From: Podarcis filfolensis
Lineage: Eukaryota
DNA length: 64,000 nucleotides
Assembly: GCA_964270895.1 (NCBI GenBank)
Contig: OZ185440.1
Strand: one strand, 5' to 3'
Of the stretch, positions 12,494-46,243 are shown in pieces. The translations under genes were made by a program, and so were the position numbers. The notes beneath the pieces were generated by a model. That model made no database searches. It had not been told where the DNA came from and was given only the letters and a program-made list of their open reading frames with translations. Positions within the stretch are counted from its first letter, which is position 1. Every line of letters begins with the position of its first letter.

Positions 12494-13048
12494 TGGAATG
12501 TTTCTAAGAGCCTGAGGATTTATTACTTGGTTTGCATGACTTGAGAAGCCAAACTATGGCTTTACAGGGCCCAGACAAGCTTGTAGACAACTTTGCAGCT
12601 CAACAGCAAGCCCAGGTTCGAACAGCACGCCAAGTGAAACCTTGGCTTTGCTGAGTGTGGCAGAGACCACAGGACCAGGGAAGGAGCACAGAGGCTGCAG
12701 CCTCCCCTGGGAGTCCCATATGGTCCCAGGAAGCTTACATTGTTGTAAGAATCTAGGCCAATGTGTAGACCTGTGAAAAAGGGCTCCATTCTAAATCGTG
12801 TACACAGCAAGGATTAGACTTTATCCCAGAGCATCATTGATCTAACAGCTTGGATTTTTTTCTTTCAAATGCGAAACAAGTAAATTTTATGTGTAATCTA
12901 ATCGCCCCAATGAGCGATTTTGTATGTCGCTTTGGGTTGCCTTGGGCAAAATAAAGTGACTTAGAAGATTTTAATAATAATTTTATCCTGCTTTTCATGC
13001 TCTACCTGCTTCTTTCTGTAACAAGTTTTGATTGCTTTGTTCTTACAG

Positions 13049-13173
13049 AAGAAAATGCAGAAATTATGCTTGATGTGTCCTTAGCGTACCGTGACGACAT
13101 GAGCGAGGAGTGGGTAGAAATGGCACACGAAGTTGAGACCCGAAAGCTAAAATGTAAATTTGGAGCTCCAAAA
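13049..13173 (+). CDS. WLS: Wntless coding exon 3 (125 nt; KENAEIMLDVSLAYRDD...KFGAPK)
   Basis: cag| at 13048, |gtaggt at 13174; phase fits exons 2 and 4. Confidence 0.97.
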
Positions 13174-14296
13174 GTAGGTTCCTTCTGGTTCTTGTTGGAT
13201 ATCGCTAAGATTTTCGGGTTGTTGTTTTTTTAAAAAAAGTATTGTTCCCAAAAGACTTTATGTAACTTTTGCTTTCAAAAACATGCAACACTTAGGTTCT
13301 TTCCCCACATTTTTACAAAGTTCTATATAACACTTGGTTGTAATAAAACCTCAAATTGGTTTACAAAGAAAGAATAAAACAATAAAAATATCAGTAAAAA
13401 CAAAGAGCTATTTAAAATTTTCAAAAAACAATTTAAAGTCATCGATAAGCTGTTCCAAGAGCCTGCCTGCACAGTACCTGTTAGAGAAAATCTTCTTGAA
13501 CCTGCTAGTGTAAGAGCTTTGGAAAAGCAGGTATTCGCTTGATGTCAAGATATGTGTTCATCAGGCTGTAAAATAGGATATTTGCTAAAGATAACTGCTG
13601 TCCCCATGGGATTGTGCTTTGGCTTTCCAGTATGATCTTTAGGTCTCCCATCTCAGACAAAATGGGGTTTGGAGAACATCTCTTGTGAGCACACAAGGTA
13701 TACCTCCATTGCCTGGGAGACTTTACTCTGTCCATAAGTTATGAACAAGTTCTCCCGCTACGTCATGGTTTACGTAGTAAATAGCAGAACAGTTTGCAGC
13801 AAAATCAGCAAAGGATTATTATTATTATTTTAAACTGCTTGCATGATGCTTTTTTTTCAACCACGGCTTACAACATCCTACACTCCTTTTGGATGTGGCA
13901 TTGGACTTCCCATGTATTGAATGTATTGTTTTCACAGATGTTCATGATTCCCCCCCCCCCAAGTAGGAACGGCAAGGATATTTCCCCCATCAGTAGTTGT
14001 ACCAGCTGATTTTTGAACCTTTAGTTACCATTTGTGGAAAGCAAAATTACTGGGGGGAAAGTATTAGTTAAATGTATTTCTATTACTTTTCACGCATCCT
14101 AACCTAAGCTAATGATATGGGAAGAGCAGGGGGTGGGTTATGTGTTTTTTTAAAGAAACATCTCCATCTCTCGTTACCCTCCTGAGCCAAAATAACCCAA
14201 AATAACCTGCCATTTTACAAAACGTAGGCATTTTTAAGAGCACTTGAAAAACCAGTGCTGACGGTTGTCTCTTTCCCTCTCCTGGTGTTCCAATAG

Positions 14297-14458
14297 ACTA
14301 TAGAGAATGAAGGCAAGTTCTATGACTGTGAGGTGCTTCCATTCATGGAGATTGGAACTGTTGCTCACAAATTCTACCTTATCAATATCCGTCTACCTGT
14401 GAATGAAAGGGAACGCATCAATGTGGGAATTGGAGAAATCAAAGATATCAGTCTAGTG
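14297..14458 (+). CDS. WLS: Wntless coding exon 4 (162 nt; TIENEGKFYDCEVLPFMEIG...IKDISLV)
   Basis: tag| at 14296, |gtaagt at 14459. Confidence 0.97.
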
Positions 14459-16199
14459 GTAAGTGTTCCCTTCAAACTTAAAAGCAACTGTAATTGCTGG
14501 GGTGTCAAAACATTTTGTACAGGATAGCCTTTGGAAGGTGGAGACTCTTAACTTCTGATTTGTTGAATGGAATAAGATAGGAACATTAGAAAGATGGGTT
14601 CTGGTGGCACACCACACCCATCATAATGGGCAACCCTGCCAAGATACTTCCCAAGAATTTTTGTGCCAGCTTTCTTTAAAAAAAAAAAGAAGTGTGTAAA
14701 TCAGTCATGCACACTGCTCTGTTCTAGGGAATTTGGGGTAAGTTAACAGCAAAGTGAGCATGTAATAATCCTGTTTATGCACCTCCAAAATCCATGTGTA
14801 ATAATTCCACTCATGCAAGTAAAGCAGCCCCCCCTTGCTTTTAACCTCCTGTTAACTAATTTGACTGTAAACAGATCAAGAAGCCAGAGTTGTCAACCAA
14901 CAGACTAATAGTTCATTAGTCAACAGGCTAATGAATTAACTTTCTGGGATGTTTTGATTCTGCTTAAAGATTCTTTTTCATGTTAAAACGGGCATTCAAG
15001 AGAACTAAGCCACAGTTTTCTAGTATGAATGAAATAAGCACAGATGTGGCTTCCTGAATCTTGCTTTAAGAAAGACCAGATTACCAAAAATATGAATCCT
15101 TTGCTCTCTGCAAGGAGTGCATGAACTTAACAGCTTCTTCAAAATGAAGTGAGGGTGTATAATTAGGCACTTTGTGTGGAATGCTGTCCCTGCTCAGAGC
15201 CTCCTTGCTCCCTGGGGATTTCTCCCTCTGTCATTGCTCCAGCTATTATCCTCCCCTTCCCCCACTGCATTAACTAGCTTGTCACTTGCTGTGCTAGGAA
15301 TGGCTTTCTTGATTGCCAGCAATTCCGCCTGGCCACCAGCCTTTGCCTGTCACATGCCGTCTGCCTTTGGGTGAAAGTGTGTGAATTCCACTGGAGAAAC
15401 AGGTCTCTGGAGGAACTAAGCGGGGGTGGGGGTGGGGAAGGGATATTGAGAAAAATAGGTATACCAGGACTGGATTACAACTGAGGGTCTTAAGTATGGG
15501 TCTCATTTTGATCCTCTTGTTAGGACTATCTGATATGGAAGTTAATATTCCCCCCATAAAAAATTATTGATGTTTTTCATAATACAATACAATAAAAAGC
15601 TAATCTAAATTGAAAGAAAGAAAAACAAAGTGCAAAGTCTTCTCTCAAAGGTAGATCTTGAACTCTTGTCTCACACAGAAAGGGGTGGGCTCGCCAAGCT
15701 CCTCCTGGGAGCTTTCTTTTCTTCTCCCAGCCTCTCTCCTCCCACCCCAGTATCTTCCCTTTCCTGCCTCTCACACACAGGGTCTTTCACCAGCCAGCCA
15801 TTACCTTCATGTGTGTACAATTCCCTCAGTGACTCAGAGTAGACACACACACACTGAAAAGAGAAGAAAGAAGATAAAAACAATGTAAGAATGAAAGAAG
15901 AAAACAAAGAGAGAAACTACTTCCAATTCTTTGTCGGTTACATATAAAAAGATTATTCAAAATATTCGCTCCAGGATGAAGTTAATCTGCTTGTTACAAT
16001 ATTTTCATGATTAAGCGGCTAATTGAAGAACTTGCTTCATGTGCTCGGCTTCTTCGCAGGGCTTTCTTCCTTCCCCAAATATAGTTGTTACTTGAGCTTC
16101 ACGATGTTTGTTGCAAGGTGTTGTAGTTAATGTCAAATGGATCTTAATGTTGGGAAAGGGAAGAAAGGCAGCGTTTTCAATTTGCTCTCTCTTCTCCAG

Positions 16200-16336
16200 G
16201 GTATCCATCAGAACGGAGGCTTTACAAAGGTGTGGTTTGCGATGAAAACCTTCCTTACTCCGAGCATCTTCATCATCATGATTTGGTACTGGAGGCGGAT
16301 CATGATGATGACGCGACCACCTGTGCTCCTGGAAAA
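16200..16336 (+). CDS. WLS: Wntless coding exon 5 (137 nt; GIHQNGGFTKVWFAMK...PPVLLEK)
   Basis: cag| at 16199, |gtgagt at 16337. Confidence 0.97.
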
Positions 16337-16665
16337 GTGAGTAAAGATAGATGACACAGGTGTAGCCTCCTGAATCTTGCTTTAAGGAGGAATCCTATTA
16401 CCAAAGCTACGAATCCTTTGCTCTCTACAAAGAGTGCATTAAGTTATAGCTCCTTTGAAAAGAAGTCAGGTGGCCAGTGTATAATTAGAGTGTGTGTGGA
16501 GCTCAGAGCTCTCCTCCTTCCCTTTGGATTCCCCCCTCTGGCCTTTCTCCTTCCCCATCCCCAACACTACATTATTAAATTCCTCACAAATTTTTCATTG
16601 GGGTGAATGCAGCAGCAGTTTCTCTAAAAGGGAGCACTGAAAGCACCGTTGTTGTTGTTTTCCAG

Positions 16666-16834
16666 AGTTATCTTTGCTCTTGGGATCTCTATGACCTTCA
16701 TAAATATTCCAGTAGAGTGGTTTTCTATTGGATTTGACTGGACGTGGATGTTGCTATTTGGAGACATTCGCCAAGGAATCTTCTACGCTATGCTTTTGTC
16801 CTTTTGGATCATCTTCTGTGGAGAGCATATGATG
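16666..16834 (+). CDS. WLS: Wntless coding exon 6 (169 nt; VIFALGISMTFINIPVEW...CGEHMM)
   Basis: cag| at 16665, |gtgagt at 16835. Confidence 0.97.
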
Positions 16835-17378
16835 GTGAGTATGATCGTTTCTGGGCATAATACTGTTTGTGTATGTGTGTATTTTTTATTGGCCATGGAG
16901 AAAGTATTTTAAGAGGGTTTTCTTCCCCCTTTCTGTAGAATAAAGGCAGGCAATCAGAAACAGGATGAATATATGAGGGTTTTTTTAGTCCATGGATTTG
17001 AAGCAGATGAGAAGGTAATTCTGTAAGTCGTATCAGGTGGGCAGAGCAGTCCTAACCCTGGCCTGGCAGCAGCAGGGCATGATGGAGCCACATGGCCTCC
17101 ACCACATCAAAAGCCCCACTGCTAATGATGTCTGGGATAAGGGGCTGGTAGAAACCCTGCTTCATTCTGCACTATCCTGGAACTGGGGTGGCAGTCGGGG
17201 CCCAAATTGTGCCAGATGCCATCACAAATGGATCCCGGGTCATCTCAGTCCCGCTTCACCCTCAGAGATGGTGTTGAGGAACTAGCACTATTTCAAAGTG
17301 TGCTTCAGTAATACTCTTCACCTGCTTGAGTGGCACATTGGTTACACAGGTTAAATCATTCTTATTGTTTCTTTCCTA

Positions 17379-17930
17379 CTGGTTATCTCCCACCTTGACT
17401 ACTTCAATGCGCTCTACATGGGGCTACCTTTGAAAGTGACACGGAAACTACAACTAAATCCAGAATGTGGCAGCAAAATGGTGACTGGGAGTGGCCGCTG
17501 AGACCACATAATACCAGTCCTGAAAGACCTACATTGGCTCCGTTTCCAAGCACAATTCAAAGTGTTGGTGCTGACCTTTAAAGCCCTAAACGGCTTTGGC
17601 TCAGTATAAATGAATGAGCGTCTCTTCCCCCATCATACACTGAGATCCAGCGCCGAGGGCCTTCTGGCCGTTTCCTCCTTGTGAGATGTGAGGTTACAGG
17701 GAGCCAGGCAGAGGGCCTTCTCAGTAGTGGCGCCCGCCCTGTGGAACGGCCTCCCACCAGATGTCAAGGAAATAAACAACTATCTGACTTTTAGAAGACA
17801 TCTGAAGGCAGCCCTGTTTAGGGAAGTTTTTGATGTTTTATCTCTTCTTCTTCTTCTTCCTCCTGTATTATTATTATTCTGTTGGTAGCCACCCAGATGT
17901 GCAGGGTGTAAATAATAAATTATTATTATT
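17379..17930 (+). mobile_element. 5'-truncated, frameshifted L2-clade LINE 3' fragment
   Basis: ORF2 C-terminal remnants (LDY.NALYMGLPLKVTRKLQL, DHI.PVLKDLHWL, RAFSVVAPALWNGLP) followed by simple-repeat tail. Confidence 0.85.
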
Positions 17931-17980
17931 CCTGCTACCCATTTGCAAATCATTCTGTTGTCTCCTAATTTTATTTTTAG

Positions 17981-18078
17981 GATCAGAGTGAACGAAACCA
18001 TTTCTCCGCTTACTGGAAACAAGTTGGACCAATAGCTGTGGGTGCCTTCTGCCTCTTTGTCTTTGACATGTGTGAGAG
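17981..18078 (+). CDS. WLS: Wntless coding exon 7 (98 nt; DQSERNHFSAYWKQVGP...DMCER)
   Basis: tag| at 17980, |gtaact at 18079. Confidence 0.97.
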
Positions 18079-18373
18079 GTAACTGGAGACTTTGTATTTT
18101 TAAGAGGGTTCACATAATCTTAATGTGTTTGGTTTTAGTTTTTTTTAGTTCTAAAAAGCGGCTTATGATAATAAGAAAATTATTAATGCCAGAACACTGT
18201 TCCAGCTGTAAATGTTCTTTGAATTTTTCCAATATATAGAGTCAAGCTTTGCTTGCATGAAACCAACAGAGCACTGCTCTGCCTCTGGTTCTTCCAGATC
18301 TCAAGGGGAATTGCTGCCTTATTGTATACTTTGCCGTGTGTAATTAAATCTTCTTGTTCCTTTCAATTTCCAG

Positions 18374-18437
18374 AGGGGTACAATTAAAAAATCCGTTCTA
18401 CAGTATCTGGACCACAGATGTTGGCACTGAACTGGCT
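18374..18437 (+). CDS. WLS: Wntless coding exon 8 (64 nt; GVQLKNPFYSIWTTDVGTELA)
   Basis: cag| at 18373; ends at the U12-type donor |gtatcctt at 18438. Confidence 0.96.
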
Positions 18438-18870
18438 GTATCCTTTCGCTGTTCGCATCAACAAAAGCTGTGTGTTTTGCTTGTCATAGGGTATTGGGAA
18501 AGGGGCTGCATTTTCTTCAGGGACTTTCTGAACATACTGAAAAACCTGTTGACATGGACAAACTGATAGGAACTTTTCACATAAATATTATGGACCACCT
18601 CTGGTATCCTTTGAATGTATTTCATGAATTTGGCAATTGATTTGATGATGAGGCACCTTTCTGTGGGGATGTTACTAGACAAGAAACAAGCATGTTGTTG
18701 GTTGTCTACCCAGGTAGCTAGTTGGAGGACACAAAAGTGACTAGACTTATCAAGCTACAAGGGCGGTGATAAAAGTTGAATGGCTTTGCTGTGCTTTTAA
18801 GCTTGCAGACTGAATCAGGAACAGGTAAACTTCAGGCTTGTGGAATCCACTTGCTTTTGGGGTGGGGGTA

Positions 18871-19112
18871 CAGTGGTACCTCGGGTTAAGAACTTAATTC
18901 GTTCTGGAGGTCCATTCTTAAACTGAAACTGTTCTTAACCTGAGGTACCACTTTAGCTAATGGAGCCTCCCACTGCCACTGCACCGCCGGAGCACGATTT
19001 CTGTTCTCATCCTGAAGCAAAGTTCTTAACCCAAGGTACTATTTCTGGGTTAGCGGAGTCTGTAACCTGAAGCGTCTGTAACCTGAAGCTTATGTAACCC
19101 GAGGTACCACGG
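18871..19112. mobile_element. Tc1/mariner (Tigger/pogo-like) MITE, copy 1
   Basis: TIR cagtggtacctcgggtta / taacccgaggtaccacgg, flanked by TA on both sides. Confidence 0.92.
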
Positions 19113-19243
19113 TATTCTTGTTTGGGTTATTTTTGCTTGAACCTTAAGGTTTGCCAACCATACCTGCTCAAGAGAGCAGACATACACTGAGAGTTAAGGG
19201 CCAGGTCACATTCTCAGCCCAGCAATCTTGTTTCTAGCACAAG

Positions 19244-19575
19244 AAGGTGGCGCTGGGGTCTAAACCGCTGAGCCTCTTGGGCTTGCTGATCAGAAGGTTG
19301 GCAGTTCCAATCCGCGGGATAGGGTCAGCTCCCATTGCTCTGTCCCGGCTTCTGCCACCTAGCAGTTCGAAAGCATACTAGCGCAAGTAGATAAATAGGT
19401 ACCACTACTGTGGGAAGGTAAAGGACATTTCCATGTGCTCTGGCTTCTGTCGCAGTGCCCTGTCGTGCCAGAAGCGGTTTAGCCATGCTGGCCACATGAA
19501 CCGGAAAGCTGAGCACCGCAACCCATAGTTGCCTTTGACTAGACTTAACTGTCTAGGGGTCATTTACCTTTACCT
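19244..19575 (+). mobile_element. Sauria SINE (Squam1), near full length
   Basis: ggtggcgctggggtctaaacc head, cctagcagttcgaaagca..gtagataaataggtacc core, (TTTACC)n tail. Confidence 0.9.
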
Positions 19576-19904
19576 GTTGTAGCACAACAGCAGAAATCCA
19601 CTCCCTACCTCCCTCCCATGGTTTTCCCTACCATGCCTTTTGTTTCTGCAGCCGAACTTTTTGTGCAGCAGGCTTGTTGTTACTAAGCAATTGGGAGTCT
19701 GAGCCAATCTGCTGGAAATTTCCCGGAGTTCTTCTGGATCTCCTTTTGTCCTCATGCTGCTTGTCTTTGTGTACCTCCCCTCCTGTTTTTATATTTTTAA
19801 ATATTTTGTTTTTCTGGCATGCCTGTGAACCTAAAAACATTTCTGCTGAGCTTGCTCATTTTTGGAAACTGCATGCCTGGGCCAGAAGCACTTTCAAACG
19901 GTCG

Positions 19905-20319
19905 CTAAATTCTTACAAGGCTAATGTTCTTCTCTGGCTGCATTGCACCCGCAACCTGGGACCGGGCTGACTGGTCTTTATCTTCTCTAAGGCCAGACCC
20001 ACCTCTCCTGGCCTTATGGCGAGCACTCCTCCTGGGAGAAACCAGTTCCCTTCGACTCTCTGCCCTGAGCCTCTGCAGTTCAGGAGAGGCTGAAGGGTTA
20101 CTGGACCCAGGGGGAGACTCACCTGTAGGCACTGAGTCCTCAACCACCTCTGGAGCCAGAGTGGATTCACCTGGTGCCTGCTCCTGGGGATCCAGCACAG
20201 GTGCAGGTGCTTCAGAATCAAGGCCCTGCCCCAGTTCAGCCGGCCCTGGAGGCGGGGACTCCTGTGCAGGCTGGGATTCCTCCGGTTCAGCCTCTGAATC
20301 GGATTCCCAGGCCATCACA
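19905..20319 (-). mobile_element. LTR-like element starting TGTGATG and carrying an acidic/basic ORF; far boundary uncertain
   Basis: Minus strand begins TGTG-ATG-GCC-TGG at 20319; ORF MAWESDSEAEPEE...RRELVSPRRSARHKARR; no TSD confirmed. Confidence 0.55.
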
Positions 20320-20371
20320 GTTGCTGTCTCCGCCTCGTGTGTATGTCAAGTAACTTAACTTTACTGCTCAG

Positions 20372-20515
20372 ATGGCATTTATTATCGTTGCCGGAATATG
20401 CCTCTGCCTCTACTTCTTGTTCCTGTGCTTCATGGTGTTTCAAGTGTTCAGAAATATCAGCGGCAAGCAATCCAGCCTCCCAGCAATGAGCAAAGTGCGC
20501 AGGCTTCACTATGAG
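20372..20515 (+). CDS. WLS: Wntless coding exon 9 (144 nt; [20 protein letters not shown]...RRLHYE)
   Basis: cag| at 20371, |gtaagg at 20516. Confidence 0.97.
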
Positions 20516-21470
20516 GTAAGGAGCCTGAGCAGTAATGTCTCCTTTTTAAAAGGCCACTTTGCATCAATATTCTGATCAGGTTACTAGTGAATTGTAACCA
20601 AAGAGCAGAGCTTGTTTTGCCACTAACAAGGGCTTCACGGGGAGAAGATACAGGATGGTTTTAACAGTGCCAAGTCTGGACCTGGTTGAAAAACCACTGT
20701 CCTGGACATTACTGAAGGCATTATTCTCCACACACACCACAAAAATACCCACCTGATTGCACAGAAACTACAATCCTGGGATTCTGCAAAGCAGAATTTC
20801 ACAAAGAGAAGAGTTGCAGTGGCGAATAAGCTTTCCCAGTGAGTGATTTCCATTGTGCTGCAGCTGCTGCTCAAACCATTGTCCCGGGAGCCCCTTCCCC
20901 TTCCTTCATTCCTTGGCCATGCTTCTCAAGCTTTGCATTGGTAGCGGCTGGTAGGGCAGTGTGGGAGCTCAGTGTGATGCCTTCCCAATGTGGGTGTGTC
21001 GCTGCCCATTGTAGAGCAGGGAGGCAGCAGGTAGCGCAGTGCAGACACAGCAGAACCATTTGGCTGCTCCCCTCTCGCTCACCTGCCCTCCTCTATTGGT
21101 AATGGGCAGCAGCAGTGCATTGGGAAGCCAGGGAAGCCACACCACCCTGCCCTGTGCTGGGTGAAAGGTCCAGCACTTGCCGTGGTCATCTTATAATCCC
21201 TCTCTTCTTACCTTCCATCAAGATGCTGCCAGGCAGCAAGGGTTAAACATGCTGTATGTTGAATGCTCACCAAGCCAAAGCTTTAAGGGTGGCAAGCAAA
21301 ACAAAGGCTTATCCCATCAGAAGAGATCAGGATATTGACAGCAAAGTTCTTTGAGACTAAAGGTGCTGACCTGACAGTCTCACTCTTGCTTGCTTTCCCA
21401 GTAATCTTTGAAATATTTGAAGCTATATTCCCCCCAAACACACACTTGTTATGTTTCTTTGTCTCCCTAG

Positions 21471-21554
21471 GGGCTGATTTTCAGATTCAAGTTCTTGATG
21501 CTAATCACATTAGCTTGTGCAGCCATGACCATAATATTTTTCATTGTCAGTCAG
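21471..21554 (+). CDS. WLS: Wntless coding exon 10 (84 nt; GLIFRFKFLMLITLACAAMTIIFFIVSQ)
   Basis: tag| at 21470, |gtgagt at 21555; completes the YEGL endocytic YxxPhi motif across the exon 9/10 junction. Confidence 0.97.
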
Positions 21555-22287
21555 GTGAGTATCCTAAAAATGACTTTCCACAGAGGTGTTTCCCCCCCAA
21601 AAAAATTCTACGTGGTGGTTGGGCTGCGGCCTTTTAAAACCCACTGGAGAAACTTTATGGTGCTTTTGGGTAAGGGCTTTCATCTGGTCCTTCACTAATT
21701 ACCTGTTGGAATCAACAAATAACCTTTGCATTCAGGATTGGGGTCGCTTATTCTTCCGAGACAAGACTATGTGCATTTCCCCCCCTGAATTTGGAGCTTT
21801 AGCCATGTAGCGGAGACGTTGGAGAGCATGGGCGAATGGGGCCTAGAAGTGCTCCCCTATGAAACATTTACCCACACTGCATTGCTTCCAGGGGCAGCAC
21901 AACGCATTGTGCCGCCTGAAATGGGGCCCCTACATCTCCTCCTGCCCCCAGCTGGCAAAACTGGGGGTACTCCACTCTTCTCCACCTGCTTGCTTGCTGC
22001 TGACAAAGCACAGATGCTCCCTTACTAAGAAACCGCTCCTTCTTCCAAGTGACACACTGCAGCCAATGTCACCCGGAAAGCGCCAGTGCCTCTGCTGCTT
22101 TGCTGCAGTGGCGATAAATTACAGTTTGAAACGCCGTTAAGGGAATTTTAAACTGTAACATGCCATTGGCTGTGCTGCAGATGACGTCACCTGCCGTTTG
22201 TTAAGGGTGCTGAAAGTTGTTTGAAGACCTTTCCTTTTCCCTTCACACAGCTACAATTCCCATAATTCCCTGGGAAGAAGGATTGAC

Positions 22288-22551
22288 CGTCAGCAAAAAT
22301 TTTCAGCAGGAGGCCAGTCCACTGTCCCTCAGACCTTGCGGGGGCGGGCGGTAGACTATATTTTGAAAATAAAAATAAAAATGAACAAATTCCTATGCCC
22401 TACAAATGCATTTTAAATAAAAGATGCATTTTAAATAAAAGGACACATTCTACTCATGTAAAAACAGGTTGATTCCCGGACCGTCCACAGGCCGGATTTA
22501 GAAGGCGATTGGGCCGGATCCGGCCCCTGGGCCTTAGTTTGCCTACCCATG
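22288..22551. mobile_element. hAT MITE of the 10435 family with a damaged left end, nested in an older repeat
   Basis: Internal identity with 10435-10687; right end gtttgcctacccatg. Confidence 0.8.
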
Positions 22552-22922
22552 GTTAAGACACTCTTTTAAGAAGTGTAGTTCTGTGAGGGGAATAGAAGTC
22601 TCCTAACAACTAACTATCATGTGAGTGTGGCTGTGGTGCGTGGCCAGCTCTGCAGGTGTCAAATGCAGTTCCACTGCCTGAGCCACGTGGCCCATCATGG
22701 TTCAAGATAGGATTGGCCCTGTTTCCTTTTCTTCTAGTCATTGTATGTAGAGAAAGCAAACCAGTAAGGTCACGCCTAGGAATGAGGACTCTGGAAAAGG
22801 AATGGGAGTTGCGATTTCCAACACAGAAAGGGCCGTTTCTCTAAGGGTGTGGTTGGGATTTGTTTGTTTTTCCTGCTTGCTCTGTTCCTCACTTGGTTTT
22901 ACCTTCTCTTTCTCCTGGGTAG

Positions 22923-23076
22923 GTGACTGAAGGCAGCTGGAAATGGGGTGACTACACCGTCCAAGTGAACAGTGCCTTTTTCACAGGGATCTACGGGATG
23001 TGGAATCTTTACGTCTTTGCTCTGATGTTCTTGTATGCTCCCTCACACAAAAACTACGTCGAAGAGCAATCGAACG
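22923..23076 (+). CDS. WLS: Wntless coding exon 11 (154 nt; [20 protein letters not shown]...EEQSN)
   Basis: tag| at 22922, |gtgggc at 23077. Confidence 0.96.
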
Positions 23077-24122
23077 GTGGGCAGTGGCTTGGGTTGAAGT
23101 CACCTCACTATTTTTTTTTAGAAGACGGGGGCTTCTGTGTGTTTTAAGTCTGGGTATCCTCTCATTGGTAGCCTAGTTGTATTGGTAGCATGGAGTTGTG
23201 ACTGCTAATGAATGTTCCTATTTTGAGGGTAGCCGAGGAAAACTTACATTGCGGTTTGGGGGATCATTCTGCCTCCTGTTCTAATCATGAAGGCTTTCCC
23301 ATAGGCATTGGGAGAGAACAGGATGCTAGACTTAGATGAGCCACTGACCTGATAAAGCAGGCTCTCTCCTATGTTTCTTTGAGTGTAAGGTGTGGGGAAG
23401 TTGTTTGGTAATTGCTGGTCGATCTCCGGGTGATGGGCAGTGTCGCCACCAAGGCAGTGGCAAAAAGGCTTTCTCTCCCATGCCCCACCCCTTCTAAAGG
23501 AGGCTGCTGAGATGGTGGGGGGGAAACCAGGAGTTGATATTTTTGTGACAGAACTGTTATGTCCCTGTACAGAAAACAAAATCCTGAGCTGAGCATGTAT
23601 TCAGACAGAAACCCACTTTTCCTTTAGTGACATGTAGGCCTGTCCTAAAAAGTTAGTTGCCAAAAGCATTCAGGGCTACAAACTGTGATTAAGTCCATGC
23701 TGGTTTGGTATTTGAGGTATGCTATTTCACAACTGGTTCTATTTCACCTCAAAAGTTTTAGTTAAAATAGTAGATCCCTTTAACCTAAAGTCTGCCTGTG
23801 CCCAGTTGTGGCTAGATCATTGTGACCCAGAAATGGCATGTGGAATCACCTCTTTTGGCTTGTACTGATCGTGTGGACTGATCAGTTTAAGGATGTGTTC
23901 TTATGGACCAAATCCTGCCTCAGACAGAACTCTCAAAGGCAATTCCTGAATTAAATCTCTGCTTTAAAGTTTGATGCAGACTTTTAAAAAGGTGTTCCCT
24001 TACTGCCAGCTTTTCAAAAAGAATATTCTCTTCCAAAGGCCTCATGGAGGCCTGGTCCGTGACTGTCCTCATGCCAAGACTGAGCTTTTGTCTGAAACAT
24101 GGCTTTATTTTATTTTTTCCAG

Positions 24123-25885: not shown

Positions 25886-27122
25886 GATATCACACACACA
25901 CACACAAAATATCTTAATGTCTGAATTCTGGCAAGCAATGCCTGCTGAAATCGCTTCTGCACAGCTCTCCAAGGTTCAGGGGCTGCCCTGTCACATGGAA
26001 TCAGAAGTCGGCTACTTTGTGCCAAGATCACACCTCACCAGGAAGGCTGTTCTGCTATATCCATGGAGAAACATAACTGCATTTTGTGGTTGCTAGGCAA
26101 TAACCAAAAGGTATGGGTAAGGATAAGAAGCAAGATGGGGGAAAGTGGCAAGGAACAAGAAGGCTCACACTGCAGAGGTCTGATGGCTTAGATTTTGCTG
26201 CACCAGAGCCTAGCAGGGGGCCCTATCCTGAGCACGTAAACGTCCAGGGTTTGCTAGCAGTCTTTCTGAAAACCTGAACATATCCAAATTTTGAATTGTA
26301 GGCTGATTATCGTTCTTGCACCGTATCCTTGTGCATTTAAAGCTGGACCATGCTGCTTCGAAGCAGTATCATTGCCTCTATACAGCCACGACCGCCCCCC
26401 GCCCCAAATAAATCCTGGGAAGTATAGTTCTGAGTGTTGCTATTCCTACCCCCAAACAACAATTCCCAGACTGGTATAATCACCATTCCCTCTTCCCAAG
26501 AAACACTAGGTTTTAGTGCCAGAGCCCAGCCCTGGCACATGTACAGAACATAAGAGCATTTTCAAGCATGTGCAGAGTGCCATTCTCTGAGCACAGCACA
26601 GCAGCATTTATCTCAAACATTTCCCTTTATGAGAGGGAAGCTCTACATCTTCCTTCTTCAATAGTCACTGGAAATGTATGGAGGCAATGAAGCAAGAGTT
26701 TGAGGACTGCTGCTCCTTTTCACTATTCTGCAGTAACTGCATATATTTCCAAGAGGCATCATCTCCCCCCAAATTTGCAGACTCCAAAATACGCAGTTAT
26801 GTTTGGGGTATTCTGAAGCACCTGCCTACTTTATCCAGTTTCTAACCAGCTAAATCCCTATGTCTAAATGAGTTTGTTTTTCCCCCCAAGGAAAAAAGAC
26901 TCCTGGAAATCAAACCAAATAGCTGCGTCTCTGTTCCAAAGAACTTTATGTCTTCTAGCTGCCTATCTTGATTTGGGAAATCTGATTTAAAAATTAGTGA
27001 CTCATCCTGCATGTCGAAGCTGTTTGCTGCCATCTGCTGGCAGCAGGGTAGTGTAACCTGGGATTTAAAATGAAACCAACACAAAAGGGAGTTTTATATT
27101 GTCAGGCAAAAATACCTTATTG

Positions 27123-27475
27123 CATACCGTCCAACATTTCCCTGATGATAAAAGGGACGCCCCATTCCATAATGATAACTTTACTATTTATACCCCACAC
27201 ATCTTGCTGGGTAATCCCAGCCACCCTGGGCAGCTTCCAGCATATATAAAAGCAAAATAAAGCGTTAAGACGTTAAAAAAACCAAAAACCTTCCCTATAC
27301 AGGATTGCGTTCAGACGGCTCGGGGGTTGGATAACTCCATACCCTCCAACATTTCTGCAATGAAAGTAGGGGCATCCTAAGGAAAAGTAGGACATTCTGG
27401 GATCAAATCAGAAACCGGGATGGTGTCTCTAAACCAGGGACCTCCCTGGAAAATAGAGACACTTGGAGGGGTCTG
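27123..27475. mobile_element. Non-autonomous DNA transposon with CA(T/G)ACCCTCCAA termini and a second left end at 27338
   Basis: cataccgtccaacattt at 27123, cataccctccaacattt at 27338, right end ttggaggggtctg at 27463-27475. Confidence 0.65.
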
Positions 27476-27543
27476 TTATTGTGATGGTTGGGTTTAGAAA
27501 GTTTAAGGGTCACTTCTATAGTGCAGGAAGAACATGTGGTTTA

Positions 27544-29613
27544 GACTTCCGGGGTGGCGCCATCGGCAATGGCTGACTCCCTCTGAACTGGAGGGACCAG
27601 CTCCGCACGAAACGGGTCGTTTCCGCTACGGCGAAGCGGGGACCCTTTAAAAAATCACAGGCGGATGAAGCCTGTGACCATGGGACTCGGTGGGCACCTT
27701 TAGCGCCCCCCCGCAACCCGCAAAGGAACCCATTAACGGGCTCCGAAGCGAAGAGGGGGATGTGGCGCGGTGCTGTGAGTCTACTGCTTTTTCCGAGGAG
27801 CGAAGCCGCATAGCCGTCGCCGGAGAGCGCTGCCTTTTTCCTGGGACAATTTGGCATCTAAAGAATCACCCGTGAGTACTTAAAACTCGAACAATTGGAT
27901 TTTAAATAAGGACTGGCCAGTAGAGAGGAATTGGACTCAAAATTTACTTCAATTTGGTACTGAAACGGGAAGGTCTAAACAGGAAGTCAGCCTTCCGTTT
28001 CTTTGTAGTCAGAATAAAGCAAAGACAACGTAAACTAGAGCTTAGAAAATTACTTTTAAAGGATTGACTTTCATCATTTAAAATCGTGGAACCCCCCTTC
28101 GGTAGCAGGAGAAGAAGGGGGATCTCTTTTTGGACTGTTTAAACCTGCAGAAGTGAGTTTAAAGTAAAGTAACTTTTCACCGTCCTGATCCTGGAGCGGA
28201 GTGTCAGGACTGACGTTTGAAGCTCATCGACCAGAGACAAATGTTTTTGACAGACAGCTAAAAGAAAAGTAACATAGGGATTCCATTGTTTCCTTTCGCA
28301 TTTCAAAGGAACAAATATTGACTGAATATCTTAAAAAAGAAACTTTGTTGCTATTGCTCTTAAAAGAAAGAAGAAACAGAAATTTTCCCTCTAGAGGGAG
28401 ACTGTGAAATTGTAACCAACTTTAGGAGCTTGCAGTTGTTACAGATTACAATCGTGGGAAAGGACTTGTGACCTTGTAGGACAATGTTTTCAGAAGCTCG
28501 GTTGGGTGCTTTCTGTAAAATAAATGCCCTATTGGACCAGCTAAGCCAGAAGACGGATTTGATGACTAATGCGGCCAGAAATTTTGAACAGGCAGTAGGA
28601 AACTACATGGAGCCTACCCAGGAACTAAAACAGGAGTGTGCTATGACAGCACAGATGAGAGAAGAGGATATTGCTGAATCCTGGGTGCCAGAAATGGAGG
28701 GAGTTGCGGCCCTGCAGGATTATGAGCCTTTGGATTTGATAAATGAATTTGGAAAAAACCAGATTTGGAAAGATAAAGTTTGGTTTGCTTTGGAAATGGG
28801 GGGTTGGAATGACCCTCCCATGCCGGGATGTTTGGACTTTCTGAGTCTGGTAATGGGCCGTCAGATGTTTGGAGCTGTGGGGGCTCTTAATTTTGGAGGG
28901 AATCTGAAACAGGTGTTTAAACATCACATGGAGTTTAGTCTGGACTATGGAAATGGGGCTGATCTGTTGAAAAGGGTCAAAAACATTACTAAGCTGGAGT
29001 TCCCACGAGTGAAAGGAAAATATGAAGAAGAGTCGCGGAGGGGACATGGAAGAGACTTGAGGGCCTCGGACATAAGGATACCAGGTTAATGCGCTAGATT
29101 AATGGGACAAAAAGGACTGACAAAATCCGGGACCAGGAGGAAGGGACGCTGGATGAAGATTGGATTGTTTTCCTTTTTTTTTCCTTTTGTCATTAGGACT
29201 GTTTTAAAATAATTGATGAATGTTAGAAAAATGTTGAAATGGAACTACTTGGTTCTAGTAAAAATGTTTAAAGAATTAGGTTAATGATATGGTTATGAGA
29301 AGTTGGTAAAAATAAGATTTAAGTTTTAAGTTTTAAGGTTTGCTATAAGACAAGATGAAAATAGATTAAGATAATGTAAGATAATGTAAGGACAAAATAT
29401 TGTGAACTATGGAAAGGATTTGCTGTGATAATTATTAACCAGGATACAAGAAAGGGGAGGAGGAGGAGGTCACAGAAAGAAGGTAATGAAAGTTAAAAAT
29501 TTGAGAATGATGGTTGTATTTTTTCTTTCTATTTTTCTGTTTTGTCTATTTCTTTTTTTGTTTTTTCTTTTGTATAATTTTAAAAAAAACTTTTAATAAA
29601 TATTACATAAAAA
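27544..29613 (+). mobile_element. Full-length 2.07-kb non-autonomous L1-type retroposon with 16-bp TSD
   Basis: TSD AAGAACATGTGGTTTA at 27528-27543 and 29614-29629; CpG-rich 5' end starting GACTTCCGG; T-rich 3' UTR, AATAAA at 29595 and A tail. Confidence 0.88.
28484..29089 (+). CDS. Intact 201-aa ORF of unknown function inside the retroposon
   Basis: ATG-to-TAA uninterrupted and sense to the element; no RT, endonuclease or recognisable host domain seen. Confidence 0.5.
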   Translation: MFSEARLGAFCKINALLDQLSQKTDLMTNAARNFEQAVGNYMEPTQELKQECAMTAQMREEDIAESWVPEMEGVAALQDYEPLDLINEFGKNQIWKDKVWFALEMGGWNDPPMPGCLDFLSLVMGRQMFGAVGALNFGGNLKQVFKHHMEFSLDYGNGADLLKRVKNITKLEFPRVKGKYEEESRRGHGRDLRASDIRIPG

Positions 29614-30225
29614 AAGAACATGTGGTTTAATTGGAGTGTAAATGTGGAACTCCCTCCTCCAAATGTGGATCCTTGGATAGTCCCTGCATACAACTGTTGA
29701 ACTGGGGAAATGGAAGAGGGAAGGACATAGCCTGAAGGGTGGAACCCTGCACTGGGCATCTTGTTTCGGTTTCTGGTTGTTTTTGTGAATGTAAGAGTCC
29801 TGCTGGATCAGACGAAAGGTCCAGCATCTTGCTGCCCACTCTTGCCCAACCAGTGGCCTTCAAGGAGTCCACAAGCAGGGCTTGGAAGCAATAGCTGCCT
29901 TCCACTGTTCCTCCTCTTTTGGCCTCAAAATGTGAGCCTGTTACTAGTTTAAGCCAATGCATTTATTTCTTTTTGTATTGATTTGCATTTGTATCCCATG
30001 CGTGAACTCTATTTTAGAAGAGTTACAGGAAGAAAACAAACAAAACCTGGAGCTCCCATGCAGCCATAATGTACTAGTAGCCGTCTGTGGATCAATTTGT
30101 TATCCAGCTTGAGAACCTATCGTCACTTCTCTTATGGCAGTGAGTTCCACCAGTTCATTGGGGGTTAGGCTACATGACCCTTGAGGGTCCGTCCCAACTC
30201 CATGGTTTTATGAGTGGTCACAATA

Positions 30226-44688: not shown

Positions 44689-45646
44689 CTGTTATTCCAG
44701 TAGTCCCAGAGTTCCTTGTAAATAGTTAAAATGAATGTCAACAAGATGAGGTGCGACTGCTTGCAATTCATTATTAGTAATTTTTTAGTGATTTTACATC
44801 CCATGCTGCTGAGAATCCTGGGGCATATTCCTAACTTAAGTACTTACAGCACAGGAAATTTGTGATCCTTGGTATACATGCATGGATGTACTGCAGAGGG
44901 AAGGTGAAATAATAGTTACAATTCCACAGTCTTCCTGTCTGGCCATTCAGGTCGTAACTCTGCGGTACAGCAGGCTTGTGCTGGTGTTGCCTTTCTTTAA
45001 CAGGGTTGGTGGGTCAAACCTACAAGGGGGCTGTCCTGCCTGCCTGTTGGCAGCTGTGATTACGCCAGGAGGCAACATGTTGGGCTTGTCTGTATTCATT
45101 TGCATCGGTCCTTCTGAGTAATGCAGCTGGATTGCTGAGCCTGTTGCTTCTTGAGAGCCAGTGTGGGCGTGTGCAGAAAACAGGAGAAATGGAAGCGACA
45201 AACCCCTGGGATTCGCAGCCAACAACATCCCCCTCCACAGCAGAAAATGAAAATAGCTGTGTGCTGAAGCTAGCTTAATGGGGAAGGGCGATCCTGAAGG
45301 TTTTGCGCCAGCTGCAGGGCGTTCTGTTGCTTGGGGACTGAAGAGCATTAATGAGGAGGGCCGATTGATCTCCACTCGCATAGGCAATTATAACCTTATT
45401 TCGCCTTACAGCTGCAGGCGGATCAGATATTTCACAGCTAATAGAAGGGCTGCCTGTAGAAAGTGTGGCTTGGCTCTGCTGTTTCCTTGAAATGTGGAGG
45501 GTTTGGGAGGGGACATTGTTAAATTCAGCACTCTTGTTATGTCTAAGTTTCTGCCTTCCCTCTTCTCTCTCTCTCTCCAGACCTGCTCCCCAAGGGGCTA
45601 TGTAAACACACAGAACTCCTCCTTGGTTTCCAGCCGAGTGAGCAAT

Positions 45647-46243
45647 ATGCCCGAACAAAGTAATGATTACCGAGTGGTCGTGTTTGGAGCTGCAGGCGTT
45701 GGCAAGAGTTCTCTGGTTCTCCGCTTTGTGAGGGGAACCTTCCGGGAGACGTACATTCCCACCGTCGAGGACACCTACCGCCAGGTGATCAGCTGCGACA
45801 AGAGCATCTGCACCCTTCAGATCACAGATACTACCGGGAGCCACCAGTTCCCTGCCATGCAGAGACTGTCCATCTCCAAAGGCCATGCCTTCATGTTGGT
45901 CTACTCCGTGACCAGCCGGCAGTCCATCGAAGAGCTTCAGCCCATCTACGAGCAGATCTGCCAGATCAAAGGAGACATCCAGAAGGTCCCGATCATGTTG
46001 GTGGGGAACAAGAGCGACGACTCGCAGAGGGAAGTGCAGGCCAGCGAAGGGGAGGTCCTGGCCACCAAGTGGAAGTGCTCCTTCATGGAGACGTCGGCCA
46101 AAATGAACTACAACGTGCAGGAGCTTTTCCAGGAGCTCTTGAATTTGGAGAAGAGGAGAAGCGTCAGCCTCCAGGTGGACGGTAAGAAATCCAAGCAGCA
46201 GCGCAAGAAGGATAAACTGAAAGGCAAATGCTCAGTCATGTGA
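45647..46243 (+). CDS. DIRAS3: DIRAS-family (Di-Ras) small GTPase, 198 aa, CAAX box CSVM; DIRAS3/ARHI orthologue by synteny
   Basis: [48 protein letters not shown] and C-terminal CSVM; strong acceptor at 45580/45581; lies downstream of WLS in the same orientation. Family call is certain, the paralogue name rests on synteny and diagnostic residues. Confidence 0.85.

What the first reader, a model, noticed from the sequence alone, without database searches (positions are those of the whole stretch)
27528..29629. Complete 2.07-kb L1-mobilised element with an intact, unrecognised 201-aa ORF and no reverse transcriptase
Seen: a perfect 16-bp TSD (AAGAACATGTGGTTTA); a CpG-rich 5' end starting GACTTCCGG (ETS-like) with a YY1-core CGCCAT about 15 nt in; one uninterrupted 201-codon sense ORF (28484-29089), the longest ORF in the window outside the DIRAS coding exon; a T-rich 3' UTR; AATAAA; and an A tail. 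Established: long TSDs, poly(A) tails and internal Pol II promoters with a YY1 site near the start are marks of L1 target-primed reverse transcription, and HAL1 (half-L1) elements encode only an ORF1-like protein. Inference: this is a young non-autonomous family with its own promoter that relies on L1 ORF2 and retains a protein. The N-terminus (INALLDQLSQKTDLMTNAARNFEQAV) looks helical or coiled-coil, but I recognise no L1 ORF1 RRM/CTD or host domain, so it may be a new cargo gene. It lies about 2.5 kb past the WLS poly(A) signals.
Basis: partly seen in the sequence, partly recalled or inferred. Interest (0 to 1): 0.75.

Follow-up and report, generated by a model that had tools for sequence, protein, structure and literature searches.

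The report
Lizard RT-less retroposon with own protein
This is a recently inserted, complete copy of a high-copy lizard jumping-gene family that has no copying enzyme and so must borrow one (most likely L1's), yet keeps a small acidic protein that matches no known protein, L1's ORF1p included.

Summary
A 2,070-bp insert (27544-29613, + strand) lies between perfect 16-bp direct repeats. It has a CpG-rich 5' end, one 201-codon ORF, AATAAA and a short A run of only 5-7 nt.

It is a repeat family, not a processed pseudogene. Contigs from four public lacertid runs cover it many times over. Copies at other loci begin at exactly base 27544. One run holds the precise empty site.

There is no reverse transcriptase or endonuclease, so it must be mobilised in trans. 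The marks fit L1-type target-primed reverse transcription.

The ORF is far longer than chance allows (0 of 2,000 shuffles). It has about ten relatives of 154-215 aa, three of them from Podarcis lilfordi. Members only 28-36% identical keep the N-terminal helix and a near-invariant 15-residue C-terminal block.

No search linked the protein to L1 ORF1p: Pfam, PDB, a profile search of 1.84 billion proteins and the Atlas all failed. It is acidic, whereas ORF1p is basic. So it works like a mammalian half-L1 (HAL1), but membership is not shown. Descent from L1 could not be tested here, because no lizard L1 sequence was within reach.

The scan has already noted this family on other DNA of this genome (17 notes, three followed up).

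The parts
27528..27543 (+). 5' target-site duplication (16 bp; 14 bp if the first two A's belong to the A tail of the 3' copy)
   Evidence: Exact repeat of 29614-29629. Only two matches in the window, none in shuffles. The empty-site contig in run X1 joins 27543 to 29631 (table 5).
27544..29613 (+). Whole retroposon copy, 2,070 bp
   Evidence: Summed contig depth is hundreds of times that of the flanks between these limits and falls sharply after about 29591. Contigs from other loci start at 27544 or 27546 in four runs (tables 2 and 8). No other copy in the window.
27544..27943 (+). CpG-rich 5' module, the putative internal Pol II promoter. It carries ACTTCCGG (27545-27552, ETS-type), CGCCAT (27558-27563) and an inverted GCCAT-type core (27568-27573).
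   Evidence: GC 0.50-0.62 and CpG o/e 0.89-1.07, against 0.30 for the window. Summed depth is 4-8 times (X1) and 10-40 times (X16) that of the ORF part, so it is the most widely shared module. Promoter function is inferred, not tested. At 27574 this copy reads T where about 90% of X1 depth reads G (table 3).
27544..28483 (+). 5' UTR, 940 nt, with five short uORFs (5-17 codons)
   Evidence: No sense ORF above 61 aa lies here.
28484..29089 (+). ORF of 201 aa plus stop; 22.8 kDa, pI 5.2
   Evidence: Relatives are P0001-P0011. No family hit in Pfam, PDB or the Atlas.
28493..28609 (+). Codes for residues 4-42, a long N-terminal helix and possible coiled coil
   Evidence: This is the only part of the AlphaFold2 model above pLDDT 50 (10-residue block means of 52, 70, 71 and 60 over residues 1-40). 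8 of 11 a/d heptad positions are hydrophobic in the best register. Oligomerisation is not shown (one search gave no verdict).
29042..29086 (+). Codes for the conserved C-terminal block, residues 187-201 (GHGRDLRASDIRIPG)
   Evidence: 10-14 of 15 residues are identical in members that are only 24-25% identical elsewhere; binomial P is 4e-8, 7e-6 and 9e-4. The depth bump over 29040-29131 and a loose end at 29041 coincide with the start of the block. No RNA structure signal (z +0.58).
29090..29613 (+). 3' UTR, 524 nt, A/T-rich (72%) and C-poor (7%). It holds short tandem repeats, a 22-nt purine tract (29448-29469), AATAAA (29595-29600) and an A run starting at 29609.
   Evidence: No coding remnant: no sense ORF of 40 aa or more.
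29614..29629 (+). 3' target-site duplication
   Evidence: empty-site joint.

Best explanation
The insert is a full-length, recently inserted copy of a high-copy, non-autonomous poly(A)-type retroposon family of lacertid lizards.

Inferred life cycle:
1. Transcription starts at the element's first base, from a promoter carried inside the CpG-rich 5' module.
2. The RNA is cleaved and polyadenylated at its own AATAAA.
3. The 201-aa protein is translated from it.
4. A LINE reverse transcriptase/endonuclease supplied in trans, most likely L1 ORF2p, nicks a T-rich target, primes on the A tail and copies the RNA. This leaves a 14-16-bp target-site duplication.

The family-specific protein is acidic, with an N-terminal long helix and a conserved basic C-terminal block. 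It is kept because it helps the element's own RNA compete for the borrowed enzyme, the role ORF1p plays in half-L1 elements.

Shown: the insert, the TSD, the empty site, the repeat family, the shared 5' end, the absence of RT/EN, and the conservation of the ORF.

Inferred: promoter function, L1 as the driver, what the protein does, and whether it descends from ORF1.
For: - TSD: perfect, and beyond chance.
- Empty site: one X1 contig joins 27543 to 29631, skipping 2,087 bases, which is the element plus one TSD copy to within a base or two (two letters, AT, lie between the two sides). Its flank differs from the window at 16 of 320 positions (tables 5, 5c and 8).
- Repeat family: 16,038 (X1) and 11,374 (X16) contigs were laid. 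Summed depth over the element is roughly 100-1,300 times the flanking single-copy depth in X1. This is a rough figure; the tool warns that depth is not a copy number.
- Shared 5' end: contigs with unrelated upstream sequence start at 27544 in X1, X16 and X17, and at 27546 in X19.
- Even coverage: depth is roughly flat from 27844 to 29591, so most copies are near full length.
- No RT/EN: the only ORF over 61 aa on the sense strand is the 201-aa one. It has no Pfam match, and no L1 RT/EN motifs occur anywhere in the window.
- ORF beyond chance: 0 of 2,000 shuffles.
- Relatives: 154-215 aa and 28-94% identical, among them three Podarcis lilfordi 'hypothetical' proteins. The four indels between this ORF and P0003 are all in frame.
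- Conserved C-terminal block.
- Youth: CpG o/e is about 1 in the 5' module.
- Background: L1 is active and polymorphic in lizards (PMC3787681).
Against: - No autonomous L1 of this genome could be compared, so neither L1 descent nor L1 dependence is shown.
- The A tail is only 5-7 nt.
- The bases before the nick (bottom strand TTCTT/CC) fit the L1 endonuclease preference only loosely.
- The protein has no detectable similarity to ORF1p.
- It is acidic (pI 4.6-6.0 in the intact members), which is odd for an RNA chaperone.
- AlphaFold2 gives no confident fold beyond one helix.
- Intact relatives come from databases of predicted proteins, which favours open frames.
- No DNA of other copies could be fetched, so dN/dS was not computed.
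- This copy differs from the family majority at 11 or more listed positions, among them a Tyr-to-His change at a conserved residue (28922) and 27574 in the promoter module. It may itself be inactive.
- No RNA evidence: runs X17 and X19 are only guessed to be RNA, and they also cover the neighbouring repeat.
Confidence: 0.8

Rival explanations
1. A true half-L1: the family arose from a lacertid L1 by loss of ORF2, and the 201-aa ORF is a shrunken, fast-evolving descendant of L1 ORF1. This is a sub-reading of the best explanation, and it is what earlier follow-ups of this scan concluded on other windows.
For: The layout matches L1 with ORF2 removed: a ~940-nt 5' UTR with a promoter at the very 5' end, then an ORF that opens with a long helix, then a 3' UTR with a purine tract, AATAAA and an A run. 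Earlier notes s1-287803, s1-312088 and s1-292323 say so, one from a window holding an intact L1. I could not check their comparisons.
Against: No similarity to Transposase_22 (ORF1p) in Pfam, even at E up to 10, for any of 7 members. None to solved ORF1p structures with a family profile. No ORF1p among the hits of a profile search of 1.84 billion representatives. Nothing in the Atlas. The protein is acidic, while ORF1p is basic. The most conserved parts are the two ends; in ORF1p it is the RRM/CTD core that is conserved (my knowledge).
Confidence: 0.45
2. The ORF is not ORF1-derived. It is a captured host fragment or a protein that arose de novo within a non-autonomous element.
For: No homology to ORF1p or to anything else. 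The only relatives are about ten unannotated proteins of the same family. Acidic composition. In the P. lilfordi member P0006 the middle of the protein is replaced while both ends are kept, which shows modular turnover.
Against: No host homologue was found either, and a captured gene should have one. Fast-evolving ORF1 coiled coils can lose all detectable similarity. The layout is that of L1.
Confidence: 0.3
3. The ORF has no function for the element. It is open here because the copy is young, and the conserved ends reflect RNA or DNA signals rather than a protein.
For: Differences between this copy and its closest relatives look roughly neutral: 10 amino-acid changes in 173 residues against P0001. 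The depth bumps show that the conserved stretches are conserved as DNA. Databases list only open frames, so the sample is biased.
Against: Members down to 28% identity keep 196-215-aa frames that end at the same motif. The indels are in frame. The conserved C-terminal stretch has no RNA-structure signal (z +0.58). The ORF is far longer than chance.
Confidence: 0.15
4. An ordinary processed pseudogene or retrogene of a single host gene, or a one-off internally deleted L1 copy.
For: The TSD, AATAAA and A run are what any L1-made retrocopy would show.
Against: Thousands of contigs in several species cover it. Copies at other loci share the exact 5' end and the whole length. Divergent subfamilies coexist within one genus. 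No named host homologue turned up: the only database relatives are three unnamed Podarcis lilfordi predictions and unlabelled contig ORFs.
Confidence: 0.03

Closest known systems
HAL1 (half-L1) elements of mammals
   Same: Non-autonomous and about 2 kb long. Own 5' UTR, a single ORF in the ORF1 position, no ORF2, poly(A)-type 3' end, and presumably mobilised by L1 ORF2p. HAL1 is described as an L1 derivative that encodes only ORF1p and arose several times in mammals (PMC5753468).
   Different: HAL1 proteins are recognisable ORF1p; this one is not, and it is acidic. The host is a squamate, and I found no paper describing HAL1-like elements in lizards. Descent from L1 is untested here.
Autonomous L1 of squamates (for example the L1AC families of Anolis)
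   Same: Young, polymorphic, largely full-length insertions with many divergent lineages coexisting in one genome (PMC3787681). This family likewise has divergent subfamilies within Podarcis and an empty site in another run.
   Different: No ORF2 (RT/EN), and a third of the length.
SVA/LAVA and processed pseudogenes (other L1 ORF2p passengers)
   Same: RT-less, polyadenylated, flanked by TSDs, mobilised in trans (PMC3287187, listed; abstract only read).
   Different: Those carry no conserved protein of their own. Processed pseudogenes also lack an internal promoter and do not form self-propagating families.
ZfL2-1 ORF1p of zebrafish (a LINE ORF1 protein without RRM or zinc knuckle)
   Same: From my own memory, not checked here: a LINE first-ORF protein built from a coiled coil plus a basic C-terminal region, still able to self-associate and bind nucleic acid. 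It shows that ORF1-type function does not need the canonical domains.
   Different: It belongs to an L2-clade autonomous element with a different 3'-end recognition mode. No sequence comparison was made.

Membership tests
Insertion made by L1-type target-primed reverse transcription | Target-site duplication of about 7-20 bp flanking the insert | tested here: met
   Perfect 16-bp repeat, present only twice in the window, 0 of 100 shuffles.
Insertion made by L1-type target-primed reverse transcription | Precise empty site (flanks plus one TSD copy) in a genome that lacks the insert | tested here: met
   An X1 contig joins 27543 to 29631, skipping 2,087 bases (tables 5, 5c, 8). The junction is precise to within a base or two.
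Insertion made by L1-type target-primed reverse transcription | Poly(A) signal and 3' A tail | tested here: met
   AATAAA at 29595-29600 and an A run at 29609-29615. The tail is only 5-7 nt.
Insertion made by L1-type target-primed reverse transcription | Nick at a T-rich site (TTTT/AA-like on the primed strand) | tested here: inconclusive
   The primed strand reads TTCTT/CC at this one site. Other copies' sites could not be read.
Non-autonomous retroposon family | Many copies sharing both termini | tested here: met
   Thousands of contigs laid. Starts at 27544/27546 in four runs, with unrelated upstream sequence. Depth falls after about 29591.
Non-autonomous retroposon family | No reverse transcriptase or endonuclease | tested here: met
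   A single 201-aa ORF without Pfam hits. No RT/EN motifs in the window.
HAL1 (half-L1) | The ORF is an ORF1p homologue (coiled coil + RRM + CTD; Pfam Transposase_22) | tested here: not met
   No match in Pfam, the PDB profile search, 1.84 billion representatives or the Atlas. Only an N-terminal helix is predicted. pI is 5.2.
HAL1 (half-L1) | UTRs and ORF traceable to an autonomous L1 of the same lineage | not testable with these tools
Earlier scan notes assert it, but I did not check them.
HAL1 (half-L1) | ORF2 absent | tested here: met
Processed pseudogene of a host gene | One or few copies, traceable to an intron-containing parent, no self-propagation | tested here: not met
   High-copy family with divergent subfamilies. 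No named host homologue found.

The most novel reading that the evidence does not exclude
The 201-aa protein is not a decayed ORF1p. It is a new kind of retroposon accessory protein: acidic, with an N-terminal helix and a conserved RDLRASD[IL]R.PG tail. On this reading it lets an RT-less element capture L1's enzyme, for instance by docking its own RNA or itself onto the L1 particle. That would be a parasite-of-a-parasite strategy distinct from both SINEs and HAL1.
Probability: 0.25. Interest if true: 0.7.

Novelty: new variant of a known kind. Interest (0 to 1): 0.45.

Why it matters
Non-autonomous elements that keep a protein of their own are rare. The textbook case, HAL1, is known from mammals and carries a recognisable ORF1p. 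Here a young, apparently still active squamate family has the same layout, but its protein has lost, or never had, every recognisable ORF1p feature while keeping two short conserved ends.

That makes it a natural experiment on three questions:
- What is the minimum an RNA needs in order to be chosen by L1 ORF2p?
- How is cis-preference subverted?
- How fast can first-ORF proteins evolve?

It also matters for annotation. Podarcis gene sets list these ORFs as hypothetical host proteins.

Tried and rejected
No DNA of relatives could be fetched, so there is no dN/dS and no look at their termini.
- **Word-index protein searches.** The whole ORF, its C-terminal 47 residues and a 7-member profile found only family members. 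One call failed on a parameter limit.
- **Metagenome scan** with the family alignment: nothing. A first try failed for lack of conserved columns.
- **AlphaFold2**, run twice with 4 and 8 sequences: mean pLDDT 38 and 41. I therefore ran no fold search, since matches to such models are meaningless.
- **Homotrimer test** of residues 1-70: no verdict, which is evidence neither for nor against.
- **ESM Atlas**, run twice: low recognition and unrelated hits.
- **Rfam** over 27100-29750: only sub-threshold lncRNA noise.
- **RNA folding** of the conserved C-terminal stretch and of the 3' end: no signal. The 5' 137 nt are weakly structured, z -2.1.
- **P0005** looked as if it might link the family to another domain. 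Its second half matches nothing in the element or in Pfam, and it is probably a chimeric gene model.
- **Expression.** The runs guessed to be RNA (X17, X19) hold only diverged pieces and also cover the neighbouring repeat, so no claim is made.
- **Findings look-ups** by sequence and by further words returned nothing.
- **Bao & Jurka 2010** on HAL1 is not held in the library.
Full report
**Observation.**
- The 16-mer AAGAACATGTGGTTTA occurs exactly twice in the 64-kb window, at 27528-27543 and 29614-29629. The chance expectation is 0.01.
- Between the repeats lie 2,070 bases that start GACTTCCGG. An ETS-type ACTTCCGG sits at +2 to +9 and CGCCAT at +15 to +20.
- The first ~400 bp have GC 0.50-0.62 and CpG observed/expected 0.89-1.07. 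The window average is 0.30.
- One ATG-initiated ORF of 201 codons runs from 28484 to 29089. It has A at -3 and an in-frame stop 15 nt upstream.
- None of 2,000 dinucleotide-preserving shuffles of the element gave an ORF that long; the largest was 156 codons.
- The 3' UTR is 72% A+T and 7% C. It holds small tandem repeats and a 22-nt purine tract.

Two corrections are needed. The A tail is only 5-7 nt (29609-29615, overlapping the TSD). And two ORFs in the window are longer: the DIRAS ORF (249 aa, Ras family) and its antisense shadow.

WLS exons lie on the + strand up to about 23144 and DIRAS is at 45494-46243. The element is therefore intergenic and on the same strand as both genes.

**It is a repeat family and the insertion is recent.** No other copy lies in the window. 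Twenty public runs hold 34-48% (sixteen runs) or about 5% (four runs) of the element's 31-mers, and none holds this exact copy. I laid 27200-29950 on four of them.
- 16,038 contigs of run X1 and 11,374 of X16 were laid at 85% likeness or more. Part of these belong to a much more abundant repeat just upstream.
- Summed depth over the element is 22,000-263,000 in X1, against about 175-250 on the single-copy flank. It falls from 28,555 to 484 across the 3' end. The tool warns that this is not a copy number, so I take it only as 'hundreds of copies or more'.
- Contigs whose upstream part is unrelated to this locus begin to match at exactly 27544 (X1, X16, X17) or 27546 (X19). Full-length copies at other loci therefore share this 5' terminus.
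- Depth is roughly level from 27844 to 29591, so most copies are not 5'-truncated.
- One X1 contig joins 27543 directly to 29631, skipping 2,087 bases. That is the element plus one TSD copy, to within a base or two. Its flank differs from the window at 16 of 320 positions. This is the empty site in a related lizard.
- An X16 contig, 8 differences in 318, stops matching at 29632 in the same way.

With the perfect TSD and the undecayed CpGs, this dates the insertion after the split from those animals. Whether it is polymorphic within its own species is unknown, because run identities are coded.

**It is non-autonomous.** The sense strand has no other ORF above 61 aa. The 201-aa protein has no Pfam match. 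A motif scan of all six frames of the window finds no L1 reverse-transcriptase or endonuclease signature. The element must be copied in trans.

The long TSD, AATAAA and terminal A run are the marks of L1-type target-primed reverse transcription. L1 is active and highly polymorphic in lizards (PMC3787681). The other squamate LINE clades (CR1, L2, RTE/Bov-B) do not leave poly(A) ends with long TSDs (my knowledge). L1 ORF2p is therefore the likeliest driver. That is an inference: the nick site (TTCTT/CC on the primed strand) fits the L1 preference only loosely, and the tail is short.

**The protein.**
- *Relatives.* The word-index search found three. A profile search of 1.84 billion representatives found five. 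A 7-member profile added one more. With cluster mates there are eleven proteins in all. Three are 'hypothetical predicted proteins' of Podarcis lilfordi (P0002 at 81% identity, P0006 at 36-38%, and the partial P0005). The rest come from unlabelled Logan contigs.
- *Frame conservation.* Members only 28-38% identical still have 199-215-aa frames that end with the same residues. Against P0003 there are four indels, and all four are in frame.
- *Uneven conservation.* The last 15 residues (GHGRDLRASDIRIPG, coded by 29042-29086) are 10-14/15 identical in proteins that are 24-25% identical elsewhere. Binomial P is 4e-8, 7e-6 and 9e-4. The N-terminal ~57 residues come next. In P0006 the middle is replaced outright.
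- *DNA-level echo.* The depth profile shows bumps over the 5' module, the ORF start and 29040-29131. A loose end falls at 29041, exactly where the conserved block begins, and its upstream consensus translates to the ...LQK found in the divergent P. lilfordi member.
- *Protein versus RNA constraint.* That stretch shows no RNA-structure signal (z +0.58). This favours constraint on the protein.
Databases of predicted proteins also over-represent open frames.

**What the protein is not.** There is no similarity to L1 ORF1p (Transposase_22) or to anything else. This holds for Pfam at E up to 10 for seven members, for PDB sequences with a single sequence or a profile, for the ESM Atlas and for the billion-scale profile search.

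All intact members are acidic, pI 4.6-6.0, with a basic tail in some. ORF1p is strongly basic (my knowledge).

AlphaFold2 with 4 and then 8 sequences gives mean pLDDT 38 and 41. Only the N-terminal helix (model residues 4-42) scores above 50, with 10-residue block means of 52-71 over residues 1-40. No fold search was worth running. A homotrimer test of residues 1-70 gave no verdict.

**Mechanism proposed.**
1. Transcription starts at base 1. It is driven by downstream core-promoter elements carried in the transcript: an ETS-type site and GCCAT-type (YY1-like) cores within the first 30 nt, as in human L1 and many TATA-less CpG promoters (my knowledge). This would explain why new copies remain promoter-competent and why all copies share one 5' end.
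2. The protein is translated and, by analogy with ORF1p and HAL1, acts on its own RNA or on the L1 particle to gain access to ORF2p.
3. ORF2p then nicks the target, primes on the A tail and inserts the copy.

Only the end products are shown: the TSD, the empty site, and the family with a shared 5' end and a conserved ORF. This particular copy differs from the majority of copies at 11 or more listed positions, among them 27574 inside a GCCAT-type core and a Tyr-to-His change at a conserved residue (28922). It need not itself be active.

**Relation to what is known.** The element works like a mammalian half-L1. HAL1 is 'a non-autonomous derivative of L1 [that] encodes only ORF1p' and arose several times in mammals (PMC5753468). 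Membership fails on the one defining feature I could test, ORF1p homology. The other, descent from an L1, could not be tested: the window holds no L1, and no lizard L1 sequence was within reach.

Earlier follow-ups of this scan, on other windows of the same genome, concluded that the family descends from L1 and keeps a shrunken, fast-evolving ORF1 remnant (s1-287803, s1-312088, s1-292323). One of those windows held an intact L1. I treat this as an untested lead and give ORF1 descent about 0.45.

Full-text searches found no paper describing HAL1-like or ORF1-only elements in lizards. Repbase and Dfam could not be consulted, so the family may already be catalogued there.

**Verdict.** It is unproven on L1 as the driver and on the origin of the protein. 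The scan has met this family repeatedly (17 notes), so this window adds one more young copy, an empty site, and the mapping of the conserved protein ends. Interest is moderate.

Noticed in passing
window 27216-27475: Just upstream of the insertion site lies a far more abundant repeat. Summed contig depth is 0.4-1.8 million in X1, about 30 times that of the element. It shows many internal joints and A-rich loose ends at 27251/27261, so it is probably a SINE or a composite of SINE pieces. Rfam found no tRNA or other small-RNA match there.
   Followed up: partly
window 12955-23144 (+) and 45494-46243 (+): WLS exons (GOLD and transmembrane domains) and a single-exon DIRAS-like Ras-family ORF were confirmed by Pfam. 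The element sits between them on the same strand, about 4.4 kb past the last WLS coding exon.
   Followed up: yes
window 27516-27857 (-): A 113-aa antisense ORF starts inside the CpG-rich 5' module and reads out through the element's 5' end and the TSD into the flank. It may be only a GC-rich artefact. It recalls antisense ORF0 of primate L1 (my knowledge).
   Followed up: no
window 29367-29390: A 10-bp unit (TAAGATAATG) is present 2.4 times in the 3' UTR. One X16 contig lacks one unit, so the repeat number varies among copies.
   Followed up: no
proteins P0002 and P0006 (Podarcis lilfordi, CAI5765718.1 and CAI7935145.1): Two members from one species are only about 36-38% alike. They share near-identical N- and C-termini but have unrelated middles. 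Deeply divergent or mosaic subfamilies therefore coexist, and both are annotated as host 'hypothetical proteins'.
   Followed up: partly
window 27432/27544 (run X1): One X1 contig joins the upstream repeat at 27432 to the element's first base, 27544, skipping 111 bases. This suggests another locus where a copy of this family abuts that repeat, or a chimeric contig (table 5).
   Followed up: no
window 45275-45886 (-): A 203-aa ATG ORF antisense to the DIRAS exon has no Pfam match. It is most likely a shadow of the coding exon.
   Followed up: partly
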